DNA from: Octopus bimaculoides
Taxonomy: Eukaryota
DNA: 64,000 bases
Direction: 5' to 3'
Assembly: GCF_001194135.2 (NCBI RefSeq)
Contig: NC_068982.1
Coordinates: 186,736,346-186,800,345, forward strand
Part shown: positions 7,803 to 61,904 of the stretch, piece by piece
How positions within the stretch are numbered: position 1 is the first letter of the stretch
Layout of the letters: the number at the start of each line of letters is the position of its first letter
Notes under the pieces: model-generated
The model's input: only the letters and a program-made list of their open reading frames with translations
What the model was told of the DNA's origin: nothing
Databases searched by the model: none
Position numbers and translations under genes: made by a program

Positions 7803-9479
7803 ACAATCAATATATAAAAAGGATGAGCCATGTTAACAGTAAAAACTATGCACTGAGGTATATTCAGAATTGCAAATATATCAATATTTGAGATGGCATA
7901 ACCAATCAAGTTAACGATTTTGGATGATCAAATTATTTCATTTCAAACAGGTTAATGTTTGGAGGTGATGAACAAAAAATTGTCAATTTCAACCATTTCT
8001 TTCAGTAGATGAAACAATTTTAGTTGTGAAAGCTAGATTCACTGATGCCGTATTCTTCATGTTAATGGTGAAAACAAAATATTGATCTGTTCACTGGTGG
8101 TGTTTGACATGAAATTCTTGCTAAATATATCACAGACGTTAACAACTTCTCCATCGGCCAATCTATTATAGTCAGGACTGGGGAATCAATACACAAAACT
8201 TTCAACTGATTCCAACTCATCAATTTCTGCTGCCATCAATTCTATTTGTAATTAGAATAATTGACACATTTCAACATGCATGGCCAAGATGCATTATCAG
8301 GTTATTATATGTTAGCATCCTACCCTGTTGTGGTGTTTACTAAACCTTTCATTACCATATTTCTGTGGACTCACACTAGTTTTGTGTAAATTAATTTCGA
8401 AAAGGATGAAGAATTTAGTAAAATAATTATGTTGTTATCAAGTTCATGTTTGGGACATGAATCCTGAAGGTAAGGTTTTAATTTAGATCACTTTAAAACA
8501 GGAGGTTTATATCAGAGAACCAGGAGTGGGTTAAAAAAGTTAGAAACATAAAACAAATTTTTAAAAAGAACTTTTTCTTTTTTTAAATCAAAAAGCTACA
8601 GAGTAATAGAAACAAGAGCACTCAGAGAGCGTGAATCTCTGCCAAGGCCAACACCAATGTCCTCTCAACGATTAGCCAGAGATGATTTTTAAAATGAGAA
8701 TCTCTGAAATAAACTCGACTGCTCTCACAAACGAGAATACTGAAAATGAACCTGACTGCTCTCAAAAACTAAGTAAAAAAATGGAAAAATAATCGAGGAC
8801 CATTAAGAAATATAGACAAGGAAAGCAACCAGACCATCAGGGATAGTTACTGAGACACTGAAATATACAGTTTTGTAGGACATAAGCTTGTCAGTCTTGA
8901 TGTACAGGGAGGTGTCAGTCCTAATGACTGATGGAGCAGAGTCTCATCACTGTTACAAAGACAAAGAAAAAACTCTAAAGAAGCAACTGCATCAGTTCAT
9001 AAAAGCAAGTGTTTACACTGGTAAACACTAACACACACACATGGTTCTTGTCAACCAGTTTTTACTGACAAAGCATTGGTCAAGCCAAGTTTATGGTAGG
9101 AGACACCTAAGGTGATGTGCAATATAAATGAACCTGGAACCAGATGGTTTGGAAGAAAACTGCTTAATCACACAGCCATGTTTACATTTACTTACAAAAT
9201 ATTTTATAAAATAAAAGAAGCAAACACATGAAATTAATGGACCAAGTTATGAAAGATGTAGAAAACAGAGCAGAGTTAATTAGAAAGAGAATTAGCTAAG
9301 ATGGGACAGTTGGGGTTTAGCATCTATACCCTCTTCTTAATGAGACAACTAAAGATGTTTTGTTTTGGGATTTGCAAGATTCTTTATGTGAGTTCATGTG
9401 TTGAAGCATATTTCGTTGTATCTGGAGAGAGACATTCTCTTTTAGTGCCTAACACACTCACCGGTAAAGTTTCTACTCA

Positions 9480-9780
9480 TTTACTTATTGATATGCCCGA
9501 AAATGCTCGATGGGTTAAATGATAAGGCACGAAAAGAGAATGACCCTCCCCAGACACAATAAAGGAGATGCTTTTAGCTAAATCATTATACTGAGCTTTT
9601 GCTGACCTGTAGAAGGCCTTTGACAAGGTTTCACAATCTGTAGTCTGGTGGCCACAAACAAAATTAAGTGAAGAGGAATACCAAAGGTCAGTGAAAGCCA
9701 TGTACAGAGATGCTTTCAAAAAGGTGTCAGTAATGAGAGTTGCAAAGAATTCAGGAAGCAAGTAGGGCCCAGCATCCTTC
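9480..9780 (+). mobile_element. RTE LINE reverse-transcriptase fragment, degraded
   Basis: Aligns with the RT segments at 20600-20900 and 29560-29800 (DL.KAFD-type region). Confidence 0.65.
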
Positions 9781-10289
9781 TGATTTACAAAAGTTCTTCA
9801 CAACTTTTTGCTTTCAAAACATGTCTTTATTTATACAGGGACCTTTGAATATACAGAAATGTCACTCCTTTATTAATTTCACTAAGTGGGACACAACTAT
9901 CAATGTATCTAATCAACTATATAAACCCCAATACCCAGTCTGGTAGATTTTTATCAAACAGCTAAGTTTACCAGAGTTAGGTGTGGCTGTGTGGAAAGAA
10001 GCTTGCTTCCCAAGCACATAGTTCTAGGTTAAGTCCCTCTGAGTGACCCCTTGAGCAAGTGTCTTTCACTATAGACTCTGGCTGACCAAAGCCTTGTGAG
10101 TGGATTTGGTAAGCAGAAACTGAAAGAAGCACTTCGTGTGTGTGTCTTTGTCTCCCACTGCCACTTAACAATCAGTGTTGATTTGTTTATGCTTCAGTAA
10201 TTTCTCCATAACAACCCACTATAAAACTTAATTACCACTGCATTCAAACCTACACACCCAAGGAAGATTTCAACTCAACAGAAAATATA

Positions 10290-10855
10290 TGAGGGTGAGT
10301 CAAAAAGTAATGCCATTTTGTTTAGGACAGGTATAATTACCAACATAGGAACATGTATCATACATCAAAATGAAGCTGGTCCTCTGTGGATCACATCCCT
10401 ACTTCTCAACATAGTCACCGTTTCTCTCAATAGCAATGTTCCACCTTCGAGTGAGAGCATGTATCCCTGCCCCGTAAAATTCTGTTGACTGTTCTTTGAG
10501 CCACTTCTTCACTACAGTTTTCACTTCCTCGTCACTGGAATAATGTTTGCCTCTCAAACCCTTTTTCATGGGGCCGAAGAGATGATAATCCAGTGACAAT
10601 GATAGTCCAGTGACGAAGAAATGAAAACTCTAGTGAAGAAGTGGCTCAAAGAACAGTCAACAGAATTTTACGGGGCAGGGATACATGCTCTCATTCGAAG
10701 GTAGAACATTGCTATTGAGAGAAACGGTGACCATGTTCAGGAGTAGGGATGTGATCCACAGAGGACCAGCTTCCTTTTGATGTATAATACATGTTCCTGT
10801 GTTGGTAATTATACCTGTCCTAAACAAAATGGCATTACCTTTTGACTCACCCTTG
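10290..10855. mobile_element. Mariner-derived fold-back element made of two inverted copies of the transposase 3' end
   Basis: TIRs GAGGGTGAGTCAAAAAGTAATGCC / GGCATTACCTTTTGACTCACCC with TA at both ends. The minus frame encodes DYHLFGPMKKGLRGKHYSSDEEVK...WNIAIERNGDYVEK (Mariner C-terminus). Arms about 10290-10539 and 10606-10855. Confidence 0.9.
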
Positions 10856-13453
10856 TACAAAGCTAAGATTAACTTCAATGCATCGCAGTCTGATAATGGC
10901 TCAACTGGATGAAACTATACAGTCACTGTCAATAATGTTCTTGTTTAAGAATAATCTATCTTCTTCATCATCATTTAACGTCCGCTTTCCATGCTGGCAT
11001 GGGTTGGTTGGTTTGACTGAAGACTGGCAAACCAGGAGGCTGCACCAGCCACCAGTCTGATCTGTCAAGGTTTCTACAGTTGGATGCCCATCCTAGTGCC
11101 AACCACTCCGAGAGTGTAGAGGGTGTTTTTTTACATGCCACCAGCACAGGGGGCAGTCAGGTGGCACTGGCATCGACCATGCTTGAATGGTGATTTTTAC
11201 GTACCACCGGCATGGGAGCCAATCAGGCAGCACTGGCATCAACTACATTCATATGGTGCTTTTTATGTGCCACCAGCATGGGTACCAGTCAGGCGGTACT
11301 GGTTTCGGCCACAATAATATATATACTGCAGGCATAGCTGTGTGGTAAGAAGTTTGCTTCACAACCACAATCCCCCTGGTAAAACATCCATTGATCTTAT
11401 ATTGCCTGAAGAAATGAATCCATGAAGATGATCAACCTGATGGCCACGGATACTACGGACTACACTAACCATCCCAGAGACATGTGGTGTGTGGAAACGT
11501 GCATAGCGATGCATTAAATGTTTATAAATACCATCCAAGGATTATTGTTATTATTACTATATATATGTGTGTGTGTATATATATATATATATAGATAGAT
11601 TGCAGGCATGGCTGTGGTAAGAAGCTTGCTTTGCAACCACATGGTTCTGGGTTCAGCCCCACTGTGTGGCACTTTGGACAAGTGTCTTCCACTACAGCCT
11701 GGAGCCAACCAAAGCCTTGTGAGTGGAGTTGGTAGACAGAAAATGGAAGAAGCCCATTGTATATATATATATATACATCTATGTGTTTTTGTATCTGTTT
11801 GCTCTCCACCATCGCTTGGCAACCGTTGTTGGTGTGTTTACGTCCCTGTAACAGCGGTTGGGCAAAAGATATCGATAGAATAAGTACCAGGCTTAACAAA
11901 CAAAAGAAAAAAAGTACTGCGGTCGATTCATTCGGCTAAAAAATTTTCAAGGCAGTGCACCAGCATGGCCGCACTCAAATGACCAAAAGAAAAGAATATA
12001 TAAAACCGATGTTGGTGTGTTTACATCCCCGTAATTTAGCAGTTCGGGCAAAAGAGACCGATAGAATAAGTACTAGGCTTACAAAGAATAAGTCATGGGG
12101 TCGATTTGCTCGACTAAAGGCGATGCTCCAGCATGGCCGCAGTCAAATGACTGAAACAAGGAAAAGAATAAAAGAATATATATATATATATGCACACAAG
12201 TTTCCAGTTTCTATAAAATTTCAATCGGAAGGCATTGTTCAATCCAAGGTCGGGTCGTAGTAAGAGACATCAGTCCCAACTGCTGCACAGCAGGATATGA
12301 CAGGGAACCACTGTTTACAAGGTAAACTTCTTAATGACTCCAACCGTACCAGTACCCATTTTGTAAATAAACGTAGTCTTACTTTGAATGAAGACTACAG
12401 CTATAGAACTGAGATGTCTCAGCTCAATAGAAAGGAGCAATCAATTCTAACGTCTCCCAGTACTTAATCGATACTTCATTTTATCGACCCCGCCCCCACG
12501 AAGCACCTTGGAACGAATAGATCCAGAAAATAAACGCTTTTAGTCCTAAGACTCATAGAGCTGGTTATCCGGTGTCTGTGGCGTCTAAGCGACCGAGATC
12601 AGGGCATTTCCTTTCGAATACAAGTGGATTGGAGCGACGCGAAATGAGTTTTGTACAAGAACACAATGCACTGCCCGATCTGGGAATCTAAACCTCGATG
12701 TTGTGATCATGAGTGTACCACCCTAACCACAAGGCCACGCGCCTTCCAGAACATAAGAAGCTGTAAACTAAAATACCACAAGGAATTTTGCCTGACGCTC
12801 CAACGATTCTGTCAATAATTGCTAACAGAGATGCAAAATCCAGAGATTCGGGACGGAGCTAGAGGACAGGCGTTTAAATAAATCCATCCCCCGTATGACT
12901 GATGCTTCTATATCATCAGGCCCGGACGGATGAAAGATAAAGTGGACCCAAAAAAGCACCAGAGAATTTAATGCAGAAGATGGTAAACAAAAAAAAGTAA
13001 AACGTAATTCGCCGTAATTTCATACATTTCTGAAACTGAAATTGGCGCTAAATGTAAAAATGTTGGAAGCCAGCAGGCAAAACTGGTCGAAAACAATAGA
13101 AAGTAGAGCAAATACGAACTATCTTAGTCTGTCGTCATATTTCTACAAACGGTTATTAATCAACAAAAATACTAAGAGAATGGCTTCGTTACAGTGCGTG
13201 TACGCGCTCTAATAAATGGTGGGGTTCGTTTGTTTATTTGTTCTACAAATTCAGAAGCATAAACAATGTTGATTACAACTGCTAACTTTCCCACCAATCC
13301 TATTTTTACAGTCTTATATAATAAACACTGTGGGATAGTCTGATTACGTGGAGAAATAAACAGGAGGGTCACGATTGAAATGACTTCTTAAATAGGTATG
13401 CGTGATCAGGGTACGACATGGGCGGCTGGCTGCATCACGCAGTTTGGAAACAT

Positions 13454-13486
<33 letters not shown>

Positions 13487-15918
13487 GCACTTTTATGTAT
13501 AAAATTATATTGAAAACTGCGTATTAAGAGAGTTGAAGCTAACAGGTTCTTCTATTCTAAAAGATAATTATATAAAAGAAGTCGAGAATTCGGTAAGAAA
13601 CGAAAATATAAAATAAGGCGGTGAGACACAATCTTTTAGAAGGGAATCAGCGTGTTTATGTTAAGACGAAATCCTATTTTAACGTTCAAATTTTGTGCAC
13701 TATTAGCGACCTACTTTTGATATAAAAATTCTCACAAATATCTCGTTCTTTTATTAACTATACTAATATCACTTCTCAAGGAGTGCTACGGAAAACTAGT
13801 GTCAATGATCTACTAATAGTGCTTTATTAATATACTGAGGTGCCAACACTTAACTAATAACAACTTTCCACCCACCTAGCAAGATGCGCGCGTGTTTATC
13901 GGCATTATTTCAGTTTTAGTGCCAACAAAGACGCAACAGTTCTTTCTCAATTGCATAATACAACCACTAGCTACTACTACCCATACATGTATACAATCAC
14001 TTGAACAGCTGACGAAAGAAGAGTGACGACATGTGATTTTGCAAACGCAAAAATCGAAACAGGTTTTCCACTCAGTCGCAGAAACACACACATATAAATA
14101 TATATACATACACATATGTATATATATCTGTATATACATATATTTCTCCCACTATAAAAATACATTCATTTATACATATAAATACACACACACACATAAG
14201 AGATATAATTCGACAAATCTACGCACACTGTAAACAAAGAAATGTCATTGACCCATGTTGTTAATCTAGGTCAATCTTCACTGACTATGACCTTACTTCC
14301 TTCTTTATTTAACAATATCTTTAAGAAAGTGAAATATGGTTCGAGGGGAGATTTGATGGCGGAGGTCCTGGAATGGATCGCCCACATAAACTGGCCGACC
14401 TATGCCAAACCTCCGCCGATTTAGTTGCTATTTTCACCAGATCGAGTAATTTATTTAGCCGACGACGTTACTAATAACTACGCCAGAGGCCATAGATTAA
14501 GAGTCACCCGGAAAGACTGGATTTCGGTTTGACTCATGAGAAATCAAACACACCTCAAATATACGCAGGAAGTATCTTATTTATATTCTAAGCCATGTTT
14601 TATCATGACCAAAGCTCGATTTCAACTTTCACTATTGTTTCCTACGTGTTAGACATTGTCAAAAATTTGGTATTTATCCGTTTTTTCCAAAAGGGTGTAA
14701 CAGGTGAAACTTCACTGGAAAAAGGCGCGGAATTGGGGATGAAGGCATTAAAAAGTTTTTTGGATAAAAAAATTCTTTCCCGGAAGGAAACAACCACGAA
14801 ATTCTTTACTCGTTTCCTCCTCCATAAGATAGTAATAGCTATTCTGAAAGTCCGCCGATTGGAGACAGATACATTGTAATTGCTTCCGTTTCAACACGAT
14901 CTCACAGCAAATCATTGGCCAGATAAGTAGATCTCTGGAATTTTTATATTTTAATAAAATGTAAAACCCCTATTATAAATCTTAAAGAGGTGATTGATTT
15001 AATCAGCAGATAATTTCAATCAAGATTGATTATTAAAAGAAAGAATTTGGTTATGTTTTTTTTTTTTTTTATGTAGAGGTGTGACTGATTGGAAGCGTGA
15101 AAAAACAAAACAAAACAATTATAAATTATTATTAGGGACCTTTAACGTGAGTCACCGGTGTCAATCGGACAGGGGGACATCGTCAACGACACCGAAAAGT
15201 TGAAAGGACGAATACAAGGAAACTGGAAGATTCAGAAATATTAAGAGAAAATATGAAAATGGTTAAGGAGAATACATCGAATGTCAAAGATGATAAAGAG
15301 AAACAGAGAGACATTAATAAATAGAAATATTAATTTGTATGTAGAGAATGAGAAAGATATTAATCCGCGACAGAAAATAAAAACAAGCTGGTCCCAATGT
15401 GTTTATGTGTGTTTTGTAAGAAGCATCGTCGTTATATAATTAAAATATATTTTTATTAAAACAAATAAATGGATAAGTAATTAAATATAGGAAGACAGAA
15501 ATGTATTTTGTATGAATAGAGACGGAAACTGAAAGAAAATAAAGGCAAACGAAATAATTCTCGGTGGTTTTGTGTCAGTGAAGTCAGTCAATGGCGAGAT
15601 TAGGCGCTATTTACAACGATCGGGGAGGATTTTTGAATTTTTTTCATCTTTATCCTTACACGATTTCTGATACGATCAAGGAAATATAACCTTCAATTCA
15701 TGAATAATGTCCAACAGCATCATTTAGACTAACAAACCAATGTAAATTTAAAGACGAAGCGTGTTTTTAAGTGATGGGAAAACAACAAATGGCAACGAAT
15801 TCGCTTGAAAAGACGATTGAGCCATTTGAGGCGAAATACTGCGTAAAACTGAATCAGGGAGGATTTAGACATTGGAAAAGGTAAATATAAAAGATGATCA
15901 ATTGAGGTTTGATATTTA

Positions 15919-16577
<659 letters not shown>

Positions 16578-16608
16578 ATGGCTTTGTACGGAGATGCTGG
16601 CATTGTAG
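16578..16608 (+). CDS. Candidate first coding exon of the uncharacterised plus-strand gene (MALYGDAGIV + 1 nt)
   Basis: ATG (AAGAATGG context) next to the promoter, 31 nt, donor AG|GTATCC in phase 1, matching the phase of all downstream exons. No homology recognised; the link to the downstream exons is inferred. Confidence 0.4.
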
Positions 16609-34916: not shown

Positions 34917-35900
34917 TGTAGTGAACACTTCTCTCACTAGTAAATATACAGACAAACGCGAGCGTAGTAGAAAACAACTCATTCCCTGTCATCACCTGAC
35001 TGACTATTCCTTGAGCGGGTAAANNNNNNNNNNTCATTCCCTGTCATCACCTGACTGACTATTCCTTGAGCGGGTAAATTATCTCCACCCGTTCGCCCCA
35101 GGACACAAATCGACCAACCATAGCCCCTAATAAGGTCACGTGAGAGTGTTCTTCTCATGCTTCTCTGGAGCCTACCTTCAGCTATAAATAGCCTAAATTA
35201 TACCCGCCAAATCGTCGCGCCTCAGATCTCCTTTGAGATCTGGCCGCCGACCACACACGCGTAACACAGCCAGCCAGTTCCAGCGACAACATTAACAACA
35301 CCATCGTTCAACTACGAACTACAAGCATCGCCCCTGACGTCGCCAGCAGCAACACGACTCTACGACTACCAGCATCGCCGCCAGCGTCAACATGACTCTA
35401 CACGTACACAAGCTACCAACAGCTAACCGCAGCTTTTCAGCCCTGTTTGTGTGAATCGCCTCACCACGAAATTAACAGACAAGAACCCAGCCTGTGAAGA
35501 ACATCTGTATCCAAGAACCCGGCCCGGCATAGAAGCCCTAACATCACGACGAGTGATCGCTCTGCCTTAACGCTTTAACTTCTTATATACAGACACTTAC
35601 CACTGTGTACTCTAATTAAGAACTGGTAAATTCTTATACGTGTTACTGACTCTTATCAGTACTCTGTAACTCCTACATACACATACATGTATTACTCGCA
35701 CACACTCTTTTGTTTACACGACGGCCTGTCTTATAATGTGTTTTATTATGTTGCATTCACACTCACACACAGACATACAATCTAATGCTCCAATAAATCT
35801 TACTGTTATTCATCTTTATCGGTTGGTTCAATATCGTCTTCCTTACTGGCATTTACGAATTCTCTATGTTATAGTATTATAACATATCATTTCACTTCAT
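34917..35900 (+). mobile_element. Putative solo LTR, about 1 kb
   Basis: Starts TGTAGTG, TATAAATA at 35183, AATAAA at 35792, PBS-like TGGCGACCGTG at 35908. The 3' end and TSD are not resolved, and an assembly gap lies at 35024-35033. Confidence 0.5.
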
Positions 35901-36589: not shown

Positions 36590-36905
36590 CATAATGATCA
36601 CACAAACAATTACATACACACTTTTGTACATATACATGTACATACATACTTGCATGCACACACATGTGTGCATGCACACACACTCACATGCACACTCATG
36701 CACATATACACACACATGCACACACTCACACATACACATGCACACACTCATACACACAAGCATGCACACACACTCATACACACATGCACACACACTCACA
36801 CACTCCTAAAGACACACATGCACACAATCACACACACACGCACACACTCTCACACACACACACACACTCTCACACACACTCACACACACACACACACACA
36901 CACAC
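36590..36905. repeat. Compound (CA)n/(CACATG)n microsatellite
   Basis: Directly visible low-complexity tract. Confidence 0.95.
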
Positions 36906-37433
36906 CCATTCAATGCTGGAAAGGTTTTTTTTTTTTGTTGAATTTAAAAGATTTTACACTAAAACATTGCTTCTCCTTCGTTTCAATTATATGGATCGTT
37001 AGATGGAACAAAATTGTTGTGACTTCTTGTGTGGATGAAATATACCAAAAAAAAAACAGGTCACTGTTCTAAGACTGAATGATGCCTTGACGATCCCATC
37101 GGCCATCTTTGTATGAAAGCCAATAAATCGTTTTTTATTTCTGTTCTGCTTTAATGCAATGGGTTGATTGCAATAAACATCAGGTTTTTATTTAATGCAC
37201 CACTAACTCCCTGACAATGGCAAGCCAAAAGAATATGCATTATAATTCTGGACTCTGGAATGCTGAGAAATTTATGTTTAACTACAAAATTGATCCTTTC
37301 AGCAGCTGATCCCTGTCTTCCCCATTCTATCACTGTAGAACTAAGACCTGGCAATACACTGGGAAATTGTGGAAACTTCTCAGTTGATCTCTGATTTGAG
37401 TGTCAAAGTAATGGATGTTAAAGCAAAAACCTG

Positions 37434-38010
37434 CAGAGAATCATCCAGAGAAGGACCATAATGGATCATACCTGTTTTACAAGGATCATACCTGTCTTAC
37501 AAGCCTCTCTGCAACTATAACCAAATCCAGACCAGTGAAAAATCCTCAGATTGTCTTTATTAAAAGCAATAATCACTTCTTGAAATGTAACTTTTCTAAT
37601 GACAACTTTATAAAATGCGATGAATGCTTGATTTTGAAATTCCTGTCTCATGACTAGTTTGTCAATACCTTTTTAGTATCCATTCTTGCTTTGTGGAGCT
37701 CATCAATGTCCACAGTGTTCTGGAACATTTCTCATAGGCATTCCTCTAAAGTGTGCATACATTTTTGGAGGACACCATGTCTGTTTTAGTATAAATGCTT
37801 TAAAATGTCTAACAACATTTTTTTAATCATTATAATCACATCTATAAGGTATATTTTGTTTGTATCTTCCAGATGCTCATGATGAAATCTCTCCAAAAAG
37901 ACGTTTGCGCCGTATACCAGGTAATGTTATGTATTGCTAATAGCCTCTCTTTTATTTGGTTTACAACATATCACATTTATTACTAAAAAATTAGAAAAAA
38001 TCCTAACAAC
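37434..38010 (+). repeat. Segmental duplication unit, copy 1 (contains exon A); copy 2 at about 40477-41040 (contains exon B)
   Basis: 37489-37872 vs 40507-40893 differ by 4 substitutions and one poly-T length change by my alignment. Confidence 0.95.
37873..37920 (+). CDS. Duplicated-type exon A (D-AHDEISPKRRLRRIP)
   Basis: Acceptor ttgtatcttccAG, donor CAG|GTAATG, 48 nt, phase 1-1, open. Flanks are homologous to those of exons B, C and D. Confidence 0.78.
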
Positions 38011-38344
38011 TCCATCTTTCCATTAATTTATTATTTTTAAAAAAATTATCAATCTTAATTCATGAACAAGAATGTTATTGGTTAAGTCTTTCCAATGAAT
38101 GAATATTTATTTTTTTATTGCCCACAGGGGGCTAAACATAGAGGGGACAAACAAGGACAGACAAATGAGATTAAGTTGATTACATCTACCCCAGTGCATA
38201 ACTGGCACTTATTTTAATCGACCACGAAAGGATGAAAGGCAAAGTCAACCTTGGCAGAATTTGAACTCAAAACATAACAGCAGGTGAAATACAGCTAAGC
38301 ATTCCACCCAGTGTGCTAATGATTCTGCCAGCTCACCGCCCTGA

Positions 38345-40345
38345 GAGCACCAAATCAACGGGCAAAGAAAAATATACCCAGGGATAGGAGGGTACTAATG
38401 AGACGAAGAGCAAAAATCTCAAACCGTTTAAATGGACATCTAAAAGATTTCAAACGAATCTACCTCGAATACACCTTGCTTGAGATTGAAAATGCACTCA
38501 AACTTTCCCATAAAACGGAAAGGGTAGAAAAGGAAGCCAGGGCTATCAAAAACATTAAAGTGGACCCTACGGCCTTCTACAGATATGTGAAAGAACATGC
38601 TTCAGTGCGTTACAAAATAGGACCGCTGCTAGATGAAAACGGTTCACCAACTGCGGACCCCCAGAGGATCAGTGAATTACTGAATGCACAATACAAGAGT
38701 GCTTTCAGCATACCGCTGGGGAAACTACGAGTGAATGTGCCGTGTAGGGTCTTTGAGCCTGATGACACACATTGTGAAATGGCAACTATTGATAACATCA
38801 ACATAGAGGAAACTGATGTGATATCAGCCATTGAAGAGCTGAGCTTGAACTCGGCAATGGACCTTGATGGATTCCCTGCAATCCTCCTAAAGAAATGTAA
38901 AAGTGCTCTAGCTAGACTGCTTCAAATTCTTTTCCAGGATTCCCTCAGGATGGAGAAACTCCCCCAAAAACTAAAAGAGGGAATAATATGCCCTATCCAT
39001 CAGGGAGGAAGGACGGCAGAGGCTAGGAATTATAAACCTGTCTCCCTGACCTCCCACATCAATAAAGTCATGGAGCGCATTGTCAGGAAAAGACTGATTG
39101 AGTTCCTTGAGGCTAATGACCTGCTCTCTGACACCCAACATAGCTTTCGCTCAGGAAGGAGCTGTCTTACACAGCTTCTGTGACACTATGACTGGGTGCT
39201 GAAGCAATTAATGAATTGCTCAAATGTGGATGTGGTATACCTCGACTTTGCGAAGGCATTTGACAAGGTCGACCATGGAATGATGTGCCACAAAATATGG
39301 AGACTTGGCATCACCGGTAAAGTCAGAGAGTGGCTGCATGATTTCCTAAAGGACAGGAGCCAAACTGTAGCAGCCAATGGAGCTCTCTCCACAGGGACAC
39401 CAATAGTGAGTGGAGTGCCCCAGGGCACTGTGCTGTGGCCACTGCTTTTCATGGTAACTCTATCGGATATGCCATCAGTGACAGAGGCAGCCATGCTTAC
39501 CAGCTATGCTCACGACACGAAAGTCACACAGTCAGTCAAGGAAACCTCTGATACTACGCTCTTAGAGAAAGATCTAGATGCCATCCATACATGGGCTGAG
39601 GATAACAACATGCAATTCAATGCAAGTAAATTCCAGGCCCTCCGCTACCAGTTAAGTCCTGCTCAGGAATCACGACATCAGTACGTTGGACCAAGTGGAG
39701 CAACAATCCCAGAATCAAAATACGGTGCGTGATCTTGGAATAGAAATGAGCAACAATGCCTCATTTCACACACATATCAACAAAATGGTAGCAGTATCCA
39801 GAAGACTGGCCGGTTGGATTCTGAGAAATCTTCTGGACAAGGGATCAAGAAACTATGATGACTCTATGGAAGTCATTTATCCTCGGCTGACTGGACTACT
39901 GCTCTCAGCTATGGTCACTTTAGACTACAAACTACAAGGACGATAGCAGAACTTGAAGCAGTCCAACAACATTACACAAAGAAAATTGCATCAATGGAAC
40001 GACTGAGCTACTGGGACAGATTGAAAGAGCTATGACTCTGTTCCCCGGAAGGAAGGAGAGAGAGGTATGCAGTGATATATATATGGAAGGACTGGTACCA
40101 AACTTTGGAATAAAGAGCTATACCAGATTATGAATGGGACATCACTGTGCTGTCCCCAATGTGCCGACTGCTTCATTTTGGGCAAGGACGATGTACTGCA
40201 ATAGCTTGGGTTTCAAGGGCCCACAGCTGTTTAACTGTCTGCCGAAGCATCTGAGGAGCCTCCATGGAGTGGATGTAAACGTTTTCAAATGTGAACTTGA
40301 CCTTTGGCTTGCTGAGATCCCGGATGAGCCAATATCTAGGCTGTA
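38345..40345 (+). mobile_element. CR1-clade LINE, 5'-truncated ORF2 (RT), with stops and frameshifts
   Basis: NYKPVSLTSHINKVMERIV, QHSFRSGRSCLTQLL*, VYLDFAKAFDKVDHG, SGVPQGTVLWPLLF, YAHDTK. Confidence 0.93.
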
Positions 40346-40476
40346 AGATCGAACTCCATCCTTCACCAAAAGCCGCTCCGACAAAGGTGGAAAGTAGAAA
40401 GATGATCACATTGGCGGTGCTCCAGCATGGCCACAGTCATTGGACTGAAACATATAAAAGAATTTTTAAAATGTAC

Positions 40477-41040
40477 AGAAGCACCCAGTGAAGGATCATA
40501 ATGGAATACCTGTCTTACAAGCCTCCCTGCAACTATAACCAAATCCAGACCAGTGAAAAATCCTCAGATTGTCTTTATTAAAAGCAATAATCACTTCTTG
40601 AAATGTAACTTTTCTAATGACAACTTTATAAAATGCGATGAATGCTTGATTTTGAAATTCCTGTCTCATGACTAGTTTGTCAATACCTTTTTAGTATCCA
40701 TTCTTGCTTTGTGGAGCTCATCAATGTCCACAGTGTTCTGGAACATTTCTCATAGGCATTCCTCTAAAGTATGCATACATTTTTGGAGGACACCGTGTCT
40801 GTTTTAGTATAAATGCTTTAAAATGTCTAACAACATTTTTTTTTTAACCATTATAATCACATCTATAAGGTATATTTTGTTTGTATCTTCCAGAAGCTGA
40901 TGAGGAGGAGGAGGAGGAAATCGATTTAGCTAGACCTTTGGGCATTATACCAGGTAATGCTATGTATTGCTAAGTGCCTCTCTTTCGTTTAGTTTACAAC
41001 ATATCACATTTATCACTAGAGAATTTAAGAAAAACCCTGA
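40477..41040 (+). repeat. Segmental duplication unit, copy 2 (contains exon B)
   Basis: Direct sequence identity to 37434-38010. Confidence 0.95.
40894..40953 (+). CDS. Duplicated-type exon B (E-ADEEEEEEIDLARPLGIIP)
   Basis: Same acceptor sequence as exon A, donor CAG|GTAATG, 60 nt, phase 1-1. The 12-nt length difference from A is a frame-preserving GAG expansion. Confidence 0.78.
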
Positions 41041-42140
41041 CAAAGGCATCATACTATCTGCCTTTCACTCTGAGAGAGACCCTTTGTTGCCAGCAGGGGT
41101 AGGAGCTCTCTGAACTTTGCCCAGCCTAATCTTATTCTCACAGCTACGCTCTTGGAGCATCCACCTCCACTACTAACTTGGTCACCTAGATAACGGAAGC
41201 TATTTACTGTCTCTAGCTTACCCAACTGACAGTTGATGGAGTCTATTTTCTGTACATTTCCAGTGTTTATTGTACCTGCGCACCTTCCACATACAAAAGT
41301 TATTTTCCCACTTAACCTTGCCCTGGTATTGCTGTACCTCTTATACGTTCATAGCTTACACCAGGTGCATAGAAAAGGCATAGGTATGCCTTTTCTATGG
41401 ATCAAGCAGGGCCATCTACCTGAAGAGATTCGTGATTTGTCTGCCTTCCTACTAACTAAGACTTTGGTTTTTGCTAGGTTAACTCTAAAGCCATTCAATT
41501 CTAGACCTTGTTCCCATACTTGGAACTTCTTCTCTAGTTCTGGTAGTGATTCAGCTATAAAAACAAGATTGTCAGCATAGAGAAGTTCCTAGGGGCAGCC
41601 TGTCTTGAATTCCTCTGTTTTTGCTTGGAGGACTATGATTAACAAAAGGGGGCTGGGAACCGATCCTTGGAAAACCCCTATTTGTACTCTGAATTCCTTG
41701 CCGTACTTGCTGCCAACTCTCACCTTACTGATAGCGTCCCTATACATGGCTTCTACAGCTCTGACCAACCATTCATTTATCCCTAGTTTTTGCATTGATC
41801 ACCAGATAAGGGATCAGGGGACCCTGTCAAAGGTTTTCTCCAAGTCAACAAAAGCCCAGTACAAAGGTTTATCTTAGGCTATATATTTCTCCTACAGCTA
41901 CCTTACCAAAAATATAGCATCAGTGGTACTTCTCCCTGACACAAAACCAAACTGCATCTCATCTAGACTAACTCTCTTCCTAATTAGTTGGGCTTCTCTG
42001 TAACTTTCATCTCCTGATTCAACAATTTGATACACCTGTAATTATTTCTGTCTAAGGCGTCACCTTTACCTTTGTAGCAGTTGATTATGGTGCTGCTACA
42101 CCAGCCACTGGGTATGACTACTTTGTGAGTCACACCCTGA
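41040..42140 (-). mobile_element. RTE LINE RT fragment inserted between exons B and C
   Basis: MQKLGINEWLVRAVEAMYRDAISKVRVG...GVFQGSVPSPLLLIIVLQ. Confidence 0.9.
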
Positions 42141-42384
42141 TTTACAATACAGGTGACTATATGAATATGTAATATATATTTAGTTATTTTGGTGGGGTTG
42201 TTTGTGTGTGTGTGTGTATTTGTGTGACTTTCAACATATAGACAAGACAGACTTTAAAAAAAGACCTTCACTTTAACAATTTATGTAGGCATGTGCATGA
42301 TTAACAAATGTTTTTACCAGCAGTGTAGCATCAAGCAACAACCTAGTTATATCTAAAAAATATATTTTATTTATATTTTACCAG

Positions 42385-42453
42385 TGCTTGACTATGGACC
42401 TCGCATGGATGCAATTAAGAGAAAACCAGCTAAGAAATATCCCACGATGCAAG
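42385..42453 (+). CDS. Duplicated-type exon C (V-LDYGPRMDAIKRKPAKKYPTMQ)
   Basis: Acceptor tatattttaccAG, donor AAG|GTAATG followed by the same ttatgtattgctaagtgcctctc motif, 69 nt, phase 1-1, open. Confidence 0.75.
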
Positions 42454-43145
42454 GTAATGTTATGTATTGCTAAGTGCCTCTCTTTCGTTTAGTTTACATG
42501 TCACATTTATCACTAGAGAATTAGAGAAATTCTATTAACTTATTATTTAAAAAAAATTTATCTGTCGTAATTCATGAACAAGACTGTTATAGGCATAGGA
42601 GTAGCTGTGTGGAAAGTAGCTTGCTTACCAACTACATGGTTCCGGGTTCAGTCCCATTGCATGGCACGTTGGGCAAGTGTCTTCTACTATAGCCCCGTGC
42701 TGATCAAAGCCTTGTGAATGGATTTGGTAGACGGAAACTGAAAGAAGCCCGTCGTATATATGTATATGTATGTGTATGTATATGTTTGTGTGTCTGTGTT
42801 TGTCCCCGCAACATCGCTTGACAATCGATGCTGGTGTGTTTACATCCCTGTAACTTAGCGGTTCGGCATAAGAGACCGATAGAATAAGTACTAGGCTTAC
42901 AAAGAATAAGTCCTGGGGTTGATTTGCTCGATTAAAGGCGGTGCTCCAGCATGGCCACAGTCAAATGACTGAAACAAGTAAAAGAGTTACGTGTTTCCAA
43001 TGAACCAAACACTGGTTCCAAGCATTTTTGATGTTGAGGGTAACAAGTAACAAAGTATTTTTCTTGGCAGTGTTTAATTCTTTTGCTGATAAACATAAAT
43101 GAATGGCATACACACAACAACATACCTATATACATTCAAACAAAC

Positions 43146-44854: not shown

Positions 44855-46070
44855 TGGAATTCTCCATTTTTATATTGCAGAGCTTGAAAAACTTGATAAA
44901 AAGCCGCTTCCTAAGGGAGTAAGTATTCTCTTAAGTAACTTATCTGCTTATACTGTTTTCTAGGGCTCTCTTTTGAAGAAGATAACAATCCACTCTGATT
45001 CAGATGCCAATCTGCTTAGGTGGACTTAGCCATTGGTTCATGCCTCCAGAATGCACTTCCACTTTCTTTCAATCACATTGTCATACGTTGCGTTTTGCTT
45101 GTACTTTTTTTCGTTCATTTTGGAAATGTTTGTATTGTTACACACATACATGTTAACACTATCACATTCATGCACCATACCATGCCTTTCTTGTTTGTTT
45201 TCCATCCTCCCTCAGTAAGACCCTAGATCCGTTACGTATACATAGAGAAAGTTGTCCTTCCTCTACAACGCGCCACATGCCTCACTCTTGCTCCTGCACA
45301 TTTCAAGCTGTTTAATACCTCATGCATTGGCTGAAATATCCAGCACTGCCTTAAGCATTGGTATATTCAACACTGTATTTGTAATCACTGCATTAGCATA
45401 CTACCTCAGCCATGAGCCCTTTTGCACACACGCACACGCAACTCTATTATGCGTCTATTATCTTGTTTTTCAACACGTTTGTGCCAGCTCACTCCTTTCC
45501 CGACTCGATGCACATCAGATATTCACTTGTTCTGTGCTCATGCCTAGACATAATTTCCCCCTGTTAGACCTTTGTTTGGTCATGTAATGAATGGAGAAAA
45601 TTACCTGTCTTGTGCATCACCCCCGCATGCTACACTGCCGTTCTTGCTAACCCCAGCAATTACCCACAACAACAGCACCAAACACATTTCGCTTCTGAAA
45701 GACCTTCATGGCATTTCATACACTGCAATCCTGCAGGAAGATCTTCGATATCATGGATTGAGAATACACTCATTCGATCACCTGAGATCATTTTACAGTG
45801 AATTTTGATACGTGCACCTGCACTTGTGTATACGCCCTCACGCATACGCGCGCACTAGCTCATTTCTGCTGTACTGCTCAGTCACTGACTGCACACATTT
45901 TGGCATGCAAAGCGACACCGCTATTCAGACTCACTTGAATAAATATCTGTCCTGTATACACTTCAATGGTCCTCTCTCCTCATATGCAAAACTTTTCCTC
46001 AGTCATGCATTTCTTTCTCTTCTTCAGTCGTTTGTTTCCTTTTCTTAGAACCTCTCTGGAGCGGGAGTGA

Positions 46071-47225
46071 TGTAGTAGCTTCATGCAGGTTTGGTGTGGA
46101 TTCAATCCTCAATCACCAAATTTCAATTAACACTTCAACAGCACTTTTCTCACAGTAAAACAATAGTTTTTCTGTGAGTGACAGCAGTTACATTTGCCAG
46201 ATGCCTTCGCTAAGCAAAATAATGTCTTTGCCACTTGACCTTTCTAACCTCTTCTAGTCCACCAAAAGCAAGAATAGAGATAACAGACCACTAATGAAAT
46301 CTATTGTTCTAGCTGGTTTTGGATAGTTATAAAAACTAGAATTTTCTAAGGCAAAATCAGTGTGTGAGAGCAACCATCAGTTAGTGAACAGAGACCAATT
46401 AGAGTCATAGCCACAAGCAGGTAGCCACTAAAGACAAACGGCCAGAGGGAGAAAGAAGGTTACAACCAGCCAACTATGACACACAATGACCTCGACTCTA
46501 TAATTTTTACTGTCTCTCTTTTCTCTTACAACATCATTCTATCACTATCTATGGTTAAGCACGTATAGGAAAGTGGTTATACACCATTAGGTGTACACCC
46601 GCTTTCCTATATTAAATCTGTAGAAACAACGGAACGCAGATTCTGAACTATCAACACAACAATATTTATTTACAGAGGAAATTGGCAGCACTTCGCCCTT
46701 TGGTTGCTGAGACGCCGTCAATGATGTTGAGAGGTTATTTGTCTAGCTCCAGAGTTGGAATGTTGGAAAGAGACTGTCTCCAGAGTTGGAATGTTGGAGA
46801 CACTGCTTGACACGTCCATGTTCATGGCCGGCCAGCCGAGAAAGAGCATGAATTGAGCGGGAACGTTTAGATGTTGAATTCCACGCATGCACATGGGACT
46901 CTTCCAGTGTTCCTTCCGGAACTATTCCCTGCGCATGCGTAGATGAAAACGCAGTAATGGCGACTGTACCTTGGCACCAAATGACGTCACTACACACGTA
47001 TACATACATACCGGATGAAATTAACTCTTTTTACCTCGCATGCTTTTCCATTTACTAATTATACATACCAACCTGTCGTGGTTTTGGATATATACAAAGT
47101 AACAATAAATAAATATTTCTTTACAACTTCGATCATTCTTCTTTCATTTTGCACATCTGCAACAGCAACACTCGTTACAGTCGCTAACTGCCAACTCCAA
47201 CATAATATCATAATACCAGCTGTCA
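46071..47225 (+). mobile_element. Putative LTR preceded by a PPT and followed by a tRNA-Trp-like PBS; the upstream 44900-46070 may be its internal 3' region
   Basis: GGAGCGGGAGTGA|TGTAGT at 46058-46076; AATAAA near 47104; TGGTGACCCTCGAC at 47230-47243. An alternative end is CGTTACA at 47267. Confidence 0.55.
46619..46994 (-). mobile_element. Nested solo LTR, 376 bp
   Basis: Perfect termini TGTAG...CTACA, AATAAA on the minus strand near 46667, and a GCGCATGCG motif as in the 19263 LTR. No 4-6 bp TSD directly at the ends. Confidence 0.6.
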
Positions 47226-53710: not shown

Positions 53711-53921
53711 CCCACCCCTTCTGTATACCCAGGTTCTCACCGGTCACTGCATTCCCCACCCCTTCTGTATACCCAGGTTCTCACCGGTCACTGCATNNNN
53801 NNNNNNGGTTCTCACCGGTCACTGCATTCCCCACCCCTTCTGTATACCCAGGTTCTCACCGGTCACTGCATTCCCCACCCCTTCTGTATACCCAGCTTCT
53901 CACCGGTCACTGCATTCCCCA
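53711..53921. repeat. 44-bp minisatellite (cccaccccttctgtatacccaggttctcaccggtcactgcattc) spanning a gap
   Basis: At least 4.5 near-identical units visible; gap at 53797-53806. Confidence 0.9.
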
Positions 53922-54749: not shown

Positions 54750-54911
54750 AGTTTCTAAATTCTATAAAAAATTTCGAGGAAGAGTTAGAATCAGTAGAAG
54801 CTGAAAGTAGGGGGATTTTGAGTCAAAATAAATTGCACACCTCTGATCCAGCAATTGGTGAAGGTGAGGTTTCCACTGCGAGCCTAATGAATAGGACACA
54901 GCGTATACCAG
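54750..54911 (+). CDS. Duplicated-type exon D (E-FLNSIKNFEEELESVEAESRGILSQNKLHTSDPAIGEGEVSTASLMNRTQRIP)
   Basis: Acceptor tcttttcAG, 162 nt, phase 1-1, open. Ends CGTATACCAG like exon A; donor flank gtaataccatgtattgataactgcctccc is homologous to A-C. Confidence 0.75.
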
Positions 54912-59698: not shown

Positions 59699-59794
59699 TT
59701 TCCATTATTGTAAAATGTGTTAAATGTTAAATATCTAATAATAATTTATTTTTTACTTTATATCTAAACATTTCTTTTGTTGATATACTTCCAG

Positions 59795-59887
59795 AATTTA
59801 GAGAAGAGTTGTTTTTAGGAGAAGAAGAATATGAAGAAAGCCTGACTGATATCGAAAAGCAGCCAGCTGTGCAGTATGAATCATCTG
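59795..59887 (+). CDS. Exon E (E-FREELFLGEEEYEESLTDIEKQPAVQYESS)
   Basis: Acceptor ttgttgatatacttccAG, donor CTG|GTAATG, 93 nt, phase 1-1, open, acidic like B and D. Flank homology to A-D is weak. Confidence 0.68.
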
Positions 59888-61904
59888 GTAATGGCGTTTA
59901 TTGTAAATGGCTTCTTTGGGGAGGGGGAGAGTAACATATAATATGAAAAGGAACCCCTCCCTCACAACAAATTAAACTGAAGACTGCTTAATTAGTGACA
60001 AAATACATTTTTTTCAGTTACTTCTAAAAAAATTCATCCTGTGCATGGGAACTGCAAGAATCGGTAAAATCATCATCATCATCAGCATCATCATCATCAT
60101 CGTTTAACGTCCACTTTCCATGCTGGCATGGGTTGGAGAGTTTGACTGAGGACTAGCGAGCCAGAAGGCTGCACCAGGCTCCAATCTGATCTGGCAATGT
60201 TTCTACTGCTGGATGCCCTTCTTATTGCCAACCACTCCGAGAATGTAGTGGGTGCTTTTTTTATGTGCCACCGGCACAGGGGCCAGTCAAGCTGGCCTGG
60301 CATTGAGCATGTTCAGATAGTGCTTTTTAGGTGCCAGTCAGACGAGCCTGGCATCAATCAGAGGAACATGAATGTGCTAATCATTGTTGTATTTCATTAT
60401 TGGAGAACAGCTTCTTCTTTCATAATGCATCTGATTCATAAGCATCAGGAATGTTTTGGACACCCGGTGTTTCGACATTGTTGTGTCTCCTCAGTCAGAG
60501 CTACCACAGACTAATGAATCTTTTAATGAATCATTAGTTTATATTTACCTGAAATAAATTACAGAATTGTAGTTAAGAAGAATTGTGCATATTACTGCAT
60601 TTTTAATTCAACTTGTGTGTGTATAAAATAGATCAAAATTAATTTATTAATAACACTATAAGGAATCAGAGTAGTGAAATAGACAATACATCTATGTATC
60701 ACAATGTGTCTGAGTGTGTCGGCATAAATATATATGCGTATATATATATATATATATATATATATNNNNNNNNNNNNNNNNNNNNNNNNNNNNNNNNNNN
60801 NNNNNNNNNNNNNNNNNNNNNNNNNNNNNNNNNNNNNNNNNNNNNNNNNNNNNNNNNNNNNNNNNNNNNNNNNNNNNNNNNNNNNNNNNNNNNNNNNNNN
60901 NNNNNNNNNNNNNNNNNNNNNNNNNNNNNNNNNNNNNNNNNNNNNNNNNNNNNNNNNNNNNNNNNNNNNNNNNNNNNNNNNNNNNNNNNNNNNNNNNNNN
61001 NNNNNNNNNNNNNNNNNNNNNNNNNNNNNNNNNNNNNNNNNNNNNNNNNNNNNNNNNNNNNNNNNNNNNNNNNNNNNNNNNNNNNNNNNNNNNNNNNNNN
61101 NNNNNNNNNNNNNNNNNNNNNNNNNNNNNNNNNNNNNNNNNNNNNNNNNNNNNNNNNNNNNNNNNNNNNNNNNNNNNNNNNNNNNNNNNNNNNNNNNNNN
61201 NNNNNNNNNNNNNNNNNNNNNNNNNNNNNNNNNNNNNNNNNNNNNNNNNNNNNNNNNNNNNNNNNNNNNNNNNNNNNNNNNNNNNNNNNNNNNNNNNNNN
61301 NNNNNNNNNNNNNNNNNNNNNNNNNNNNNNNNNNNNNNNNNNNNNNNNNNNNNNNNNNNNNNNNNNNNNNNNNNNNNNNNNNNNNNNNNNNNNNNNNNNN
61401 NNNNNNNNNNNNNNNNNNNNNNNNNNNNNNNNNNNNNNNNNNNNNNNNNNNNNNNNNNNNNNNNNNNNNNNNNNNNNNNNNNNNNNNNNNNNNNNNNNNN
61501 NNNNNNNNNNNNNNNNNNNNNNNNNNNNNNNNNNNNNNNNNCATATATATATACATATACATATATATACATGTACATATAAATTTGACATGGCAACTCT
61601 TTCTTTTCTTGGGATTTACAGTCAAACAGCTGGGTGGAATTGCGTGGAAAATTACACAGATGTATAGAATGATCCAGTGGTGATGCTGGGCTTTGTATTT
61701 TTCATAGCTCCCATGGTTACTGAGATAATCTACTATAATAATACTCTTGTGTTTATGAATGAGAAAGGAAGGGGTGATAGATGAATAAGGAAGGAAGGGC
61801 TGATGTCATACTTGGTAGTGGGATGATGAAAACTGTATGCTGAAAAAATAAATCAAACAGCGTTTGAACTCTGTGTGAATATATCTGTGTATGTAAAGGG
61901 GGGG

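What the first reader, a model, noticed from the sequence alone, without database searches (positions are those of the whole stretch)
37489..40953. Exons diverge far faster than their introns in the A/B duplicate
By manual alignment the roughly 385 nt upstream of exons A and B differ by 4 substitutions plus one poly-T indel (about 99% identical). The exons differ at 14 of 48 aligned nt plus a 12-nt in-frame insertion. All differences fall in 9 codons that change the amino acid; the other 7 codons are identical even at silent sites, and both splice sites are intact. This inverted pattern is known from conotoxin and snake-venom PLA2 genes under positive selection. Gene conversion of the upstream intron stopping at the exon may contribute, since the downstream flanks differ at about 9 of 70 nt.
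Basis: partly seen in the sequence, partly recalled or inferred. Interest (0 to 1): 0.85.

Follow-up and report, generated by a model that had tools for sequence, protein, structure and literature searches.

The report
Gene-conversion tract beside diverged octopus mini-exons
Two neighbouring duplicated mini-exons of an uncharacterised Octopus bimaculoides gene really do differ far more than the intron in front of them, mainly because that intron was recently copied from one duplicate to the other (gene conversion) up to the exon edge; positive selection on the exons is possible but unproven.

Summary
The upstream introns (37488-37872 and 40506-40893) differ at 4 of 385 sites plus a T-run indel. 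The exons differ at 14 of 48 sites plus 12 nt. The downstream flanks differ at 9 of 70.

The window is Octopus bimaculoides. A and B are consecutive coding exons of NCBI model LOC128247056, a 126-aa orphan protein. They belong to an array of at least five paralogous, phase-1 symmetric mini-exons (A, B, C, D, F).

The 99% stretch is a bounded tract. Homology continues 5' of it at 82% and 3' of it at 71-87%. Its 3' end falls within about 10 nt of the acceptor. Upstream of the exon B groups with A (22:0 sites); downstream it groups with C (9:2). B is therefore a recombinant mosaic, so most of the contrast comes from non-allelic gene conversion, not from exon speed.

Some exon excess remains:
- 29% against 14% in unconverted intron (p≈0.03).
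- dN/dS≈4.9 on 16 codons (p 0.04-0.14).
- A transversion-rich spectrum (3:11 against 14:5, p=0.005).
- Opposite net charge in the two exons.

This is suggestive only. The nearest precedent is the opsin-type exon divergence peak between converted introns, not venom genes. No orthologue could be retrieved.

The parts
16578..16608 (+). Coding part of the first exon of LOC128247056 (MALYGDAGIV, ends in phase 1)
   Evidence: tblastn of P0001 against the window, 100% identity; sequence read
37432..37465 (+). Older-level A/B homology 5' of the tract (28/34 = 82% to 40472-40505)
   Evidence: blastn E=3e-4, collinear with the tract; 6/34 mismatches
37466..37487 (+). 22-nt local tandem duplication present only in copy A, at the 5' edge of the tract
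   Evidence: global alignment
37488..37872 (+). Upstream intron tract of exon A, 99% identical to 40506-40893 (inferred gene-conversion tract)
   Evidence: Change-point analysis puts the tract end at 37873, with support interval 37864-37874
37873..37920 (+). Exon A, 48 nt, phase 1-1, encodes DAHDEISPKRRLRRIP (net charge +2)
37921..38099 (+). Downstream intron flank of A. It is 87.5% identical to B's flank over 89 nt and 85.7% identical to C's over about 160 nt
38103..38344 (-). SINE-like repeat inserted in the A-B intron (about 10 other copies in the window)
   Evidence: self-blast coverage; sequence read
38345..40470 (+). 5'-truncated, decayed non-LTR retrotransposon (reverse transcriptase) in the A-B intron
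   Evidence: Pfam RVT_1, E=2.6e-16 for 39196-39729; its 3' tail is shared with the SINE tail (D8)
40472..40505 (+). Older-level homology 5' of the tract in copy B
40506..40893 (+). Upstream intron tract of exon B (99% identical to A's)
40894..40953 (+). Exon B, 60 nt, phase 1-1, encodes EADEEEEEEIDLARPLGIIP (net charge -8)
40954..41043 (+). Downstream intron flank of B, closest to C's flank (94.7%) and not to A's (87.5%)
41044..42160 (-). Second reverse-transcriptase fragment, on the minus strand, interrupting the B-C intron
   Evidence: frame translation shows RT motifs (FVDLEKTFDRVP, LLYADNLVF)
42344..42384 (+). Proximal upstream flank of exon C, weakly homologous to the last 40 nt of A/B's upstream intron
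42385..42453 (+). Exon C, 69 nt, phase 1-1, encodes VLDYGPRMDAIKRKPAKKYPTMQ. Its body cannot be aligned to A or B
42454..42593 (+). Downstream flank of C. It is then interrupted by a SINE at 42594-42985, and homology to A resumes at 42986-43004
44881..44918 (+). Next exon of the model (38 nt, phase 1 to 0, LEKLDKKPLPKG). It is not a member of the repeat family
46676..46810 (+). Last coding exon of the NCBI model, including the stop codon
54750..54971 (+). Unannotated paralogous unit D. The exon is 54750-54911 (162 nt, phase 1-1, open frame, ends CGTATACCAG like A) and is followed by the homologous downstream flank
59721..59947 (+). Unannotated paralogous unit F. The upstream flank is 84% identical to A/B over about 80 nt. 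The exon is 59795-59887 (93 nt, phase 1-1, open). The downstream flank follows

Best explanation
A and B are two old members of a tandem array of duplicated, phase-1 symmetric mini-exons. The array has at least five units in the window: A, B, C, D and F. It lies in a lineage-restricted Octopus bimaculoides gene, LOC128247056, which encodes a short, highly charged protein that is probably disordered.

The units are mosaics produced by non-allelic gene conversion or unequal recombination between neighbouring units. One recent event copied about 385-415 nt of upstream intron between A and B. The copied tract stopped at the acceptor site, where the exon was already strongly diverged. An older event made B's downstream intron C-like. 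So the contrast of 99% against 71% is a young conversion tract lying next to an old exon.

Why the tract ends at the exon is inferred, not shown. Either the dense mismatches and the 12-nt insertion blocked heteroduplex extension, or conversions that overwrote the exon were removed by selection.

The exon bodies have also changed more than the unconverted intron. The changes are amino-acid-changing, mostly transversional substitutions and in-frame GAG slippage, and they turned a basic block (A) into an acidic one (B). That points to a non-neutral or segment-replacement process, but it is not demonstrated.
For: Shown:
1. The window is identical to O. bimaculoides CM046602.1, and P0001 contains A, B and C consecutively.
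2. The low-divergence tract is bounded on both sides by homologous sequence at higher divergence. Mismatches are 6/34 on the 5' side, 4/385 in the tract, 14/48 in the exon and 11/88 downstream. Fisher tests give p=2e-13, 3e-5 and 4e-6.
3. The change-point puts the tract end at 37873, with support interval 37864-37874, which is at the acceptor.
4. Genealogies disagree across exon B. Upstream sites split AB|C 22 to BC|A 0. Downstream sites split BC|A 9, AB|C 2 and AC|B 4.
5. It is not a recent 3-kb tandem duplication. A is followed by SINE(-) plus LINE(+), while B is followed by a different minus-strand RT fragment.
6. The tract length is typical of non-allelic conversion, and conversion slows as the copies diverge. 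The human estimate is a mean of 250 bp with CI 63-1000, and 'a few hundred bp' across organisms (10.1101/135152).
7. Five units share intron flanks, and their exon lengths (48, 60, 69, 162, 93 nt) are all multiples of 3 and open in the same phase. This supports a real coding array.
8. The exon shows excess divergence and a shifted substitution spectrum.
Against: - No orthologous sequence could be obtained, so conversion is inferred from within-genome mosaicism alone.
- The 5' older flank is only 34 nt long.
- The assembly is short-read based (my own knowledge) and shows small artefacts at 10-N gaps elsewhere in the window. A mis-joined or polished repeat therefore cannot be ruled out without reads.
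- The coincidence of the tract end with the exon has roughly a 4% chance under a random end point, so it could be fortuitous.
- The gene is an orphan with no detectable homologue, so its function, and therefore any selection, is unverified.
Confidence: 0.62

Rival explanations
1. A recent duplication, dated by the 1% intron divergence, was followed by strong positive selection that drove exon B away from exon A, as in venom PLA2 and conotoxin genes.
For: - dN/dS≈4.9 (Nd 13 of 37 non-synonymous sites, Sd 1 of 11 synonymous sites). Randomisation gives P(Sd<=1)=0.04.
- Non-synonymous divergence exceeds that of the unconverted intron.
- The exon substitution spectrum is transversion-rich, 3:11 against 14:5 in introns, p=0.005.
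- Every charge-changing replacement goes from basic to acidic.
- Silent sites in the 7 conserved codons are unchanged, so the exons are not saturated.
Against: - The downstream intron (12.5%) and the 5' flank (18%) are as diverged as an old duplicate, and selection on an exon cannot explain that.
- Topologies disagree across exon B.
- The transposable-element content behind A and behind B differs.
- Fisher's test on dN against dS gives p=0.14 on 16 codons.
- Four of the nine changed codons carry 2-3 differences, and such multi-nucleotide changes inflate dN/dS.
- There is no signal peptide and no toxin homology.
Confidence: 0.15
2. Assembly artefact. The near-identical 385-nt stretch was resolved wrongly, or copied by gap-filling or polishing in a short-read assembly, so the true upstream intron of one exon is more diverged than shown.
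For: The window contains small assembly artefacts. Identical 45-nt and 21-nt sequences flank the 10-N gaps at 35024 and 53797. A 385-nt repeat at 99% identity is longer than short reads.
Against: - There is no N between 35033 and 50725.
- The two copies keep 4 substitutions and a T-run length difference, so they are not collapsed.
- Both junctions on each copy, flank-to-tract and tract-to-exon, are unique sequences that reads must have supported.
- The known artefacts are 100% identical and lie directly next to Ns, unlike this pair.
Confidence: 0.07
3. Functional constraint. The upstream intron carries a conserved element, such as an intronic snoRNA or miRNA as in non-coding host genes, or a splicing regulator. 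That element keeps the intron unchanged while the exons drift.
For: Host genes of intronic snoRNAs are a known case of introns more conserved than exons (my own knowledge). The first 50 nt of the downstream intron are 76-90% identical among A, B, C and D while the exon bodies cannot be aligned. Some splice-proximal constraint is therefore plausible.
Against: - No Rfam match falls in 37400-37872 or 40470-40893 at E<=1.
- The 407-nt stretch folds no better than shuffles, z=-0.47.
- The distal 300 nt of the tract have no counterpart upstream of C, D or F, nor anywhere else in the window.
- Constraint would not give 99% next to 82-87% with sharp edges.
- The exons keep phase and open frame, unlike non-coding host genes.
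Confidence: 0.05
4. Neutral decay. The gene model is a spurious or non-functional orphan transcript, the exons evolve without constraint, and the extra exon divergence is chance plus GAG slippage.
For: - There is no homologue among 5.8 billion word-indexed proteins or 1.84 billion representative proteins, apart from a doubtful hit to a repetitive protein.
- There is no Pfam domain.
- The excess of exon over old-intron divergence is only p≈0.03.
Against: - All five paralogous exons have lengths divisible by 3 and are open in the same phase. That includes D and F, which no gene model selected (85 codons; about 0.5% chance of no stop at the window's base composition, my calculation).
- The substitution spectrum differs from that of the flanking intron.
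Confidence: 0.1

Closest known systems
Exon 'peak of divergence' between introns homogenised by non-allelic gene conversion. Examples are primate red/green opsin exon 5 and colobine RNASE1 duplicates (Teshima & Innan 2008; reviewed in PMC3924837)
   Same: - Paralogous copies lie in cis a few kb apart.
- Intron sequence is nearly identical between paralogues, while an adjacent exon keeps many amino-acid differences.
- The boundary between low and high divergence is sharp.
- Genealogies are discordant along the unit.
   Different: - Here the paralogues are exons of one transcript, not separate genes.
- Only one intron segment is freshly converted.
- The function of the exon differences is unknown.
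- The cross-species test, in which introns cluster by species and exons by orthology, could not be run.
Accelerated evolution of venom genes, namely crotaline PLA2 isozymes and conotoxins (Nakashima et al. 1993, as summarised in PMC7285919)
   Same: Introns are more similar than protein-coding exon sequence, and non-synonymous change is at or above synonymous change.
   Different: - There is no signal peptide, cysteine framework or toxin homology.
- These are not paralogous genes.
- Introns are not conserved throughout. The downstream flank is 87% identical and the transposable-element content differs.
- dN/dS rests on 16 codons.
Tandem exon duplication arrays (own knowledge: Kondrashov & Koonin 2001; Letunic, Copley & Bork 2002; the titin PEVK repeat exons)
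   Same: Adjacent homologous exons share phase, have lengths divisible by 3, and have homologous flanking intron sequence.
   Different: Lengths differ widely (48-162 nt), and the exon bodies are diverged beyond alignment. A, B and C are all included together in the only available model, so they are not mutually exclusive.
ASSET, accelerated segment switch in exons to alter targeting, in snake three-finger toxins (Doley et al. 2008, as cited in PMC7285919)
   Same: A short internal exon segment differs almost completely between copies (exon positions 18-26: TCTCCAAAA against GATTTAGCT, 8 of 9 nt), while the exon ends stay similar.
   Different: No donor for the segment was found in the window. 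The gene is not a toxin, and there is only a single pair.

Membership tests
Opsin-type exon divergence peak under non-allelic gene conversion | A tract of much lower paralogue divergence embedded in homologous sequence of higher divergence | tested here: met
   Mismatches are 4/385 in the tract, against 6/34 on the 5' side, 14/48 in the exon and 11/88 on the 3' side. p=2e-13 and LRT=56
Opsin-type exon divergence peak under non-allelic gene conversion | Discordant genealogies on either side of the breakpoint | tested here: met
   Upstream sites: AB|C 22, BC|A 0. Downstream sites: BC|A 9, AB|C 2
Opsin-type exon divergence peak under non-allelic gene conversion | Tract length of a few hundred bp | tested here: met
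   The tract is 385-424 nt. The literature mean is 250 bp, CI 63-1000 (10.1101/135152)
Opsin-type exon divergence peak under non-allelic gene conversion | Across species, introns cluster by species and exons cluster by orthology | not testable with these tools
   No other cephalopod DNA or orthologous protein could be retrieved
Opsin-type exon divergence peak under non-allelic gene conversion | Exon differences maintained by selection | tested here: inconclusive
   dN/dS 4.9 with p 0.04-0.14; exon against old intron p=0.027; ts:tv shift p=0.005
Venom-gene accelerated evolution (PLA2 / conotoxin type) | Secreted product with a conserved signal peptide and toxin homology | tested here: not met
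   The N-terminus MALYGDAGIVDAHDE has no hydrophobic core (maximum KD(11) 0.81 over the first 30 windows). There is no Pfam hit and no homologue
Venom-gene accelerated evolution (PLA2 / conotoxin type) | Comparison is between paralogous genes whose introns are conserved throughout | tested here: not met
   A and B are consecutive exons of one model. Only the upstream tract is 99% identical, the downstream flank is 87.5%, and different transposable elements follow
Venom-gene accelerated evolution (PLA2 / conotoxin type) | dN at or above dS, statistically supported | tested here: inconclusive
   NG86 dN 0.47, dS 0.10. Fisher p=0.14, randomisation p=0.04
Tandem exon duplication array | Adjacent exons with homologous sequence and homologous flanks, same phase, lengths divisible by 3 | tested here: met
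   Five units (A, B, C, D, F) are found by motif and profile search. Lengths are 48, 60, 69, 162 and 93 nt, all phase 1-1
Tandem exon duplication array | Mutually exclusive use of the duplicates | tested here: not met
   P0001 includes A, B and C together. No transcript data were available to test other isoforms
Non-coding host gene with intronic snoRNA or miRNA | Conserved intron encodes a structured small RNA, and the exons lack a maintained reading frame | tested here: not met
   No Rfam match in the tract. Fold z=-0.47. The exons keep frame and phase
Introner or transposable-element-derived repeated introns | Intron sequence is a dispersed mobile element, and the flanking exons are unrelated with random phases | tested here: not met
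   The tract has no further copy in the 64 kb. The flank motif occurs only directly next to the five exons. All phases are identical, and A and B match at 34/48 nt. The rest of the genome could not be searched

The most novel reading that the evidence does not exclude
The array may be a cephalopod-restricted set of cassette mini-exons whose bodies are under recurrent diversifying or charge-switching selection. Blocks of net charge +2, -8, +4, -5 and -9 alternate along it. Meanwhile the flanking introns are kept alike by conversion. That would be a within-gene analogue of venom-type accelerated exon evolution, in a non-toxin, probably disordered protein.
Probability: 0.18. Interest if true: 0.6.

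Novelty: new member of a known kind. Interest (0 to 1): 0.36.

Why it matters
If the reading holds, this is a clean small example of how non-allelic gene conversion can mimic 'exons evolving faster than introns'. It shows why a converted intron must not be used as the neutral yardstick for paralogue divergence.

It also flags an unstudied octopus orphan gene built from a rapidly diversifying exon array. Its annotated model is probably incomplete, because two further in-phase paralogous exons are unannotated.

With other octopod genomes and population data it would be a tractable test of whether exon identity is protected from conversion by selection or simply by heterology.

Tried and rejected
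1. Simple recent tandem duplication of about 3 kb. Rejected because the transposable-element content after A (SINE plus LINE) and after B (a minus-strand RT fragment) differs, and the downstream flanks are only 87% identical.
2. The tract as a dispersed repeat. There is no third copy in the window.
3. An intronic ncRNA in the tract. There is no Rfam hit and no unusual fold.
4. A donor for the divergent exon core. Neither exon core has another match in the window at up to 3 mismatches.
5. An earlier unit upstream of A. No similarity above the shuffle level.
6. Exon E (44881-44918) as a family member. It is not homologous, and it is 38 nt long with phase 1 to 0. My first coordinates for it were wrong and have been corrected.
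7. Orthologues or paralogues:
   - The word-indexed protein search found only the window's own protein.
   - The exhaustive HMMER search added only P0002, a repetitive protein from a JGI metagenome. Its E=2e-12 comes from summing about six copies of one weak 24-residue match.
   - Two metagenome DNA scans found nothing.
   - No paper mentions the LOC identifier.
8. The last coding exon as SINE-derived. Weak peptide similarity appeared in tblastn, but blastn gave no support, so I do not claim it.
Full report
**Identity of the locus.** A concatenation of the conceptual translations of the candidate exons retrieved one protein, P0001. It is 126 aa and is named 'uncharacterized protein LOC128247056 [Octopus bimaculoides]'. 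Its contig is chromosome CM046602.1 of GCA_001194135.2. The fetched locus is base-for-base identical to the window, and window position 1 equals record position 186,736,346.

tblastn places the model's exons on the + strand:
- First coding exon: 16578-16608
- Exon A: 37873-37920
- Exon B: 40894-40953
- Exon C: 42385-42453
- A 38-nt exon: 44881-44918
- Last exon: 46676-46810

A, B and C are consecutive and all are included in the model. The protein has no Pfam domain and no signal-peptide-like N-terminus. It has no detectable relative among 5.8 billion word-indexed proteins or 1.84 billion exhaustively scanned representatives. The one exception is a doubtful hit to a repetitive metagenome protein.

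**The observation.**
- Upstream: 381 matches, 4 mismatches and a 3-nt T-run indel over 37488-37872 against 40506-40893.
- Exons: 14 of 48 aligned nt differ, plus a 12-nt in-frame insertion.
- Codons: nine codons are changed, all non-synonymously, and seven are identical.
- Splice sites: AG and GTAATG are intact.
- Downstream: 9 of 70 nt differ.

**Wider anatomy.** A and B are not a lone pair. The downstream intron motif and a profile built from it find exactly five units in the 64 kb: A, B, C, D (exon 54750-54911) and F (exon 59795-59887). The units share sequence just upstream of the acceptor and for 50-160 nt downstream of the donor. All five exons are phase 1-1 with lengths divisible by 3 (48, 60, 69, 162, 93 nt), and all are open in the same phase. 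D and F are in no gene model, so their preserved frame is independent support for a coding array. It also suggests the NCBI model is incomplete.

The introns are full of later insertions:
- A SINE-like element (38103-38344, minus strand) and a decayed 5'-truncated LINE (RVT_1, E=2.6e-16) lie between A and B.
- A different reverse-transcriptase fragment on the minus strand (41044-42160) follows B.
- A SINE splits C's downstream flank.

**What the 99% stretch is.** It is a bounded tract, not the signature of a young duplicate.
- On its 5' side, homology continues for 34 nt at 82% (37432-37465 against 40472-40505). Copy B is then cut by the LINE.
- On its 3' side come the exon (71%) and the downstream intron (87.5%).
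- The tract differs from each neighbouring segment with p between 4e-6 and 3e-5, and from all of them together with p=2e-13.
- A three-rate change-point model (LRT 56) places the 3' edge at 37873, the first exon base. The 2-log-likelihood support interval is 37864-37874. The 5' edge falls in 37450-37488.
- Three-way informative sites switch across exon B. Upstream, A and B group against C at 22 sites to 0. Downstream, B and C group against A at 9 sites, against 2 for AB|C and 4 for AC|B.

B is therefore a mosaic, A-like in front and C-like behind. A recent 3-kb tandem duplication is excluded because the sequences following A and B are different transposable elements.

The tract is not a dispersed repeat in this window. 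It has no Rfam match and no unusual folding (z=-0.47). Its length of about 385-424 nt fits the few-hundred-bp tracts of non-allelic gene conversion. That process is also reported to slow and stop as copies diverge (10.1101/135152).

The most economical reading is that one recent conversion or recombination event homogenised the upstream intron and ended where the exon was already heavily diverged. Whether the end point reflects a mechanical heterology barrier or selection against overwriting the exon cannot be decided here. By my calculation, a random end point would land this close to the acceptor roughly 4% of the time.

**Is the exon still 'too' diverged?** The proper yardstick is the unconverted intron, where 17 of 122 sites differ. 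Against that yardstick:
- The exon (14 of 48) is about twice as diverged (p=0.027).
- Nei-Gojobori counts are Nd=13 over 37 non-synonymous sites and Sd=1 over 11 synonymous sites. This gives dN 0.47, dS 0.10 and a ratio of 4.9. dS is close to the old-intron divergence.
- Significance is weak. Fisher's test gives p=0.14 and a randomisation test gives P(Sd<=1)=0.04.

Two further observations point the same way.
- The exon differences are transversion-rich (3 transitions to 11 transversions), while intron differences are transition-rich (14:5). The contrast gives p=0.005.
- Every charge-changing replacement and the inserted EEEE move B from basic to acidic. Net charge goes from +2 to -8.

The core of the exon (positions 18-26) differs at 8 of 9 nt. 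That looks more like a replaced segment than independent point changes, and such multi-nucleotide changes inflate dN/dS. No donor for this segment exists in the window.

Across the array the same asymmetry is stronger. The exon bodies of C, D and F are at shuffle-level similarity to A and B, while the first 50 intron nt downstream are 76-90% identical. That comparison is confounded by possible conversion of, and splice-related constraint on, those flanks.

**Comparison with known systems.** The best match is the 'peak of divergence' described for duplicates evolving under gene conversion. [quoted passage not shown] Colobine RNASE1 duplicates are a second example (PMC3924837).

Four of the five defining features I listed could be tested. 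Three were met and the selection feature was inconclusive. The cross-species phylogenetic feature could not be tested.

It fails on a secreted product, on paralogous genes, on introns conserved throughout, and on homology.

The locus does qualify as a tandem exon duplication array, but not as a mutually exclusive one.

**Verdict.** The feature is real and the statistics are strong. The explanation is an established mechanism acting in a new place. Positive selection on the exons remains an open, testable possibility, not a finding. No orthologous sequence, reads or transcript data were accessible, so the decisive tests are cross-species trees per segment, codon models and a McDonald-Kreitman test, long-read validation and Iso-Seq. 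These are set out under next steps.

Noticed in passing
window 54750-54911 and 59795-59887: Two further in-phase, open, paralogous mini-exons (D, 162 nt; F, 93 nt) have the array's intron flanks but are not part of the NCBI model, which ends at 46810. The 38-nt exon at 44881-44918 ends in phase 0, so D and F would have to be joined from C in a different isoform or in a longer gene.
   Followed up: partly
window 34979-35078 and around 53797-53806: The 10-N gaps are flanked by identical sequence on both sides (45 nt at gap 35024-35033, 21 nt at gap 53797-53806). These look like unmerged contig overlaps, which are small assembly artefacts.
   Followed up: partly
window 40413-40464 and 42937-42988: The 3' tail of the decayed LINE is 88% identical to the 3' tail of the SINE inserted downstream of exon C. 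This fits a SINE that borrows its partner LINE's tail.
   Followed up: no
window 37466-37487: A 22-nt local tandem duplication (ggatcatacctgtYttacaa) is present only in copy A. It sits exactly at the 5' edge of the 99% tract and may be a footprint of the recombination event.
   Followed up: no
P0002 / L002:255-6515 (JGI metagenome 3300056599): A 2086-aa repetitive protein sits on a eukaryote-like contig next to a gene with a Chromo domain. It carries about 20 repeats of ...DMSNALQSVPVVEYSPVLNALQP..., which resembles EIDLARPLGIIPVLDYGPRMDAIKRKP spanning the B|C exon junction. The library E-value of 2e-12 is inflated by the repeats, and single matches score only about 26 bits.
   Followed up: partly
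window 36598-36912: An imperfect CA/TG-rich microsatellite block lies just upstream of the array. It accounts for the weak sub-threshold mir-297, mir-466 and similar Rfam hits.
   Followed up: partly
window 6578-16131, minus strand: The public annotation has a 525-aa gene on the opposite strand. It ends about 450 nt upstream of the first coding exon of LOC128247056 (divergent arrangement). I did not identify it.
   Followed up: no
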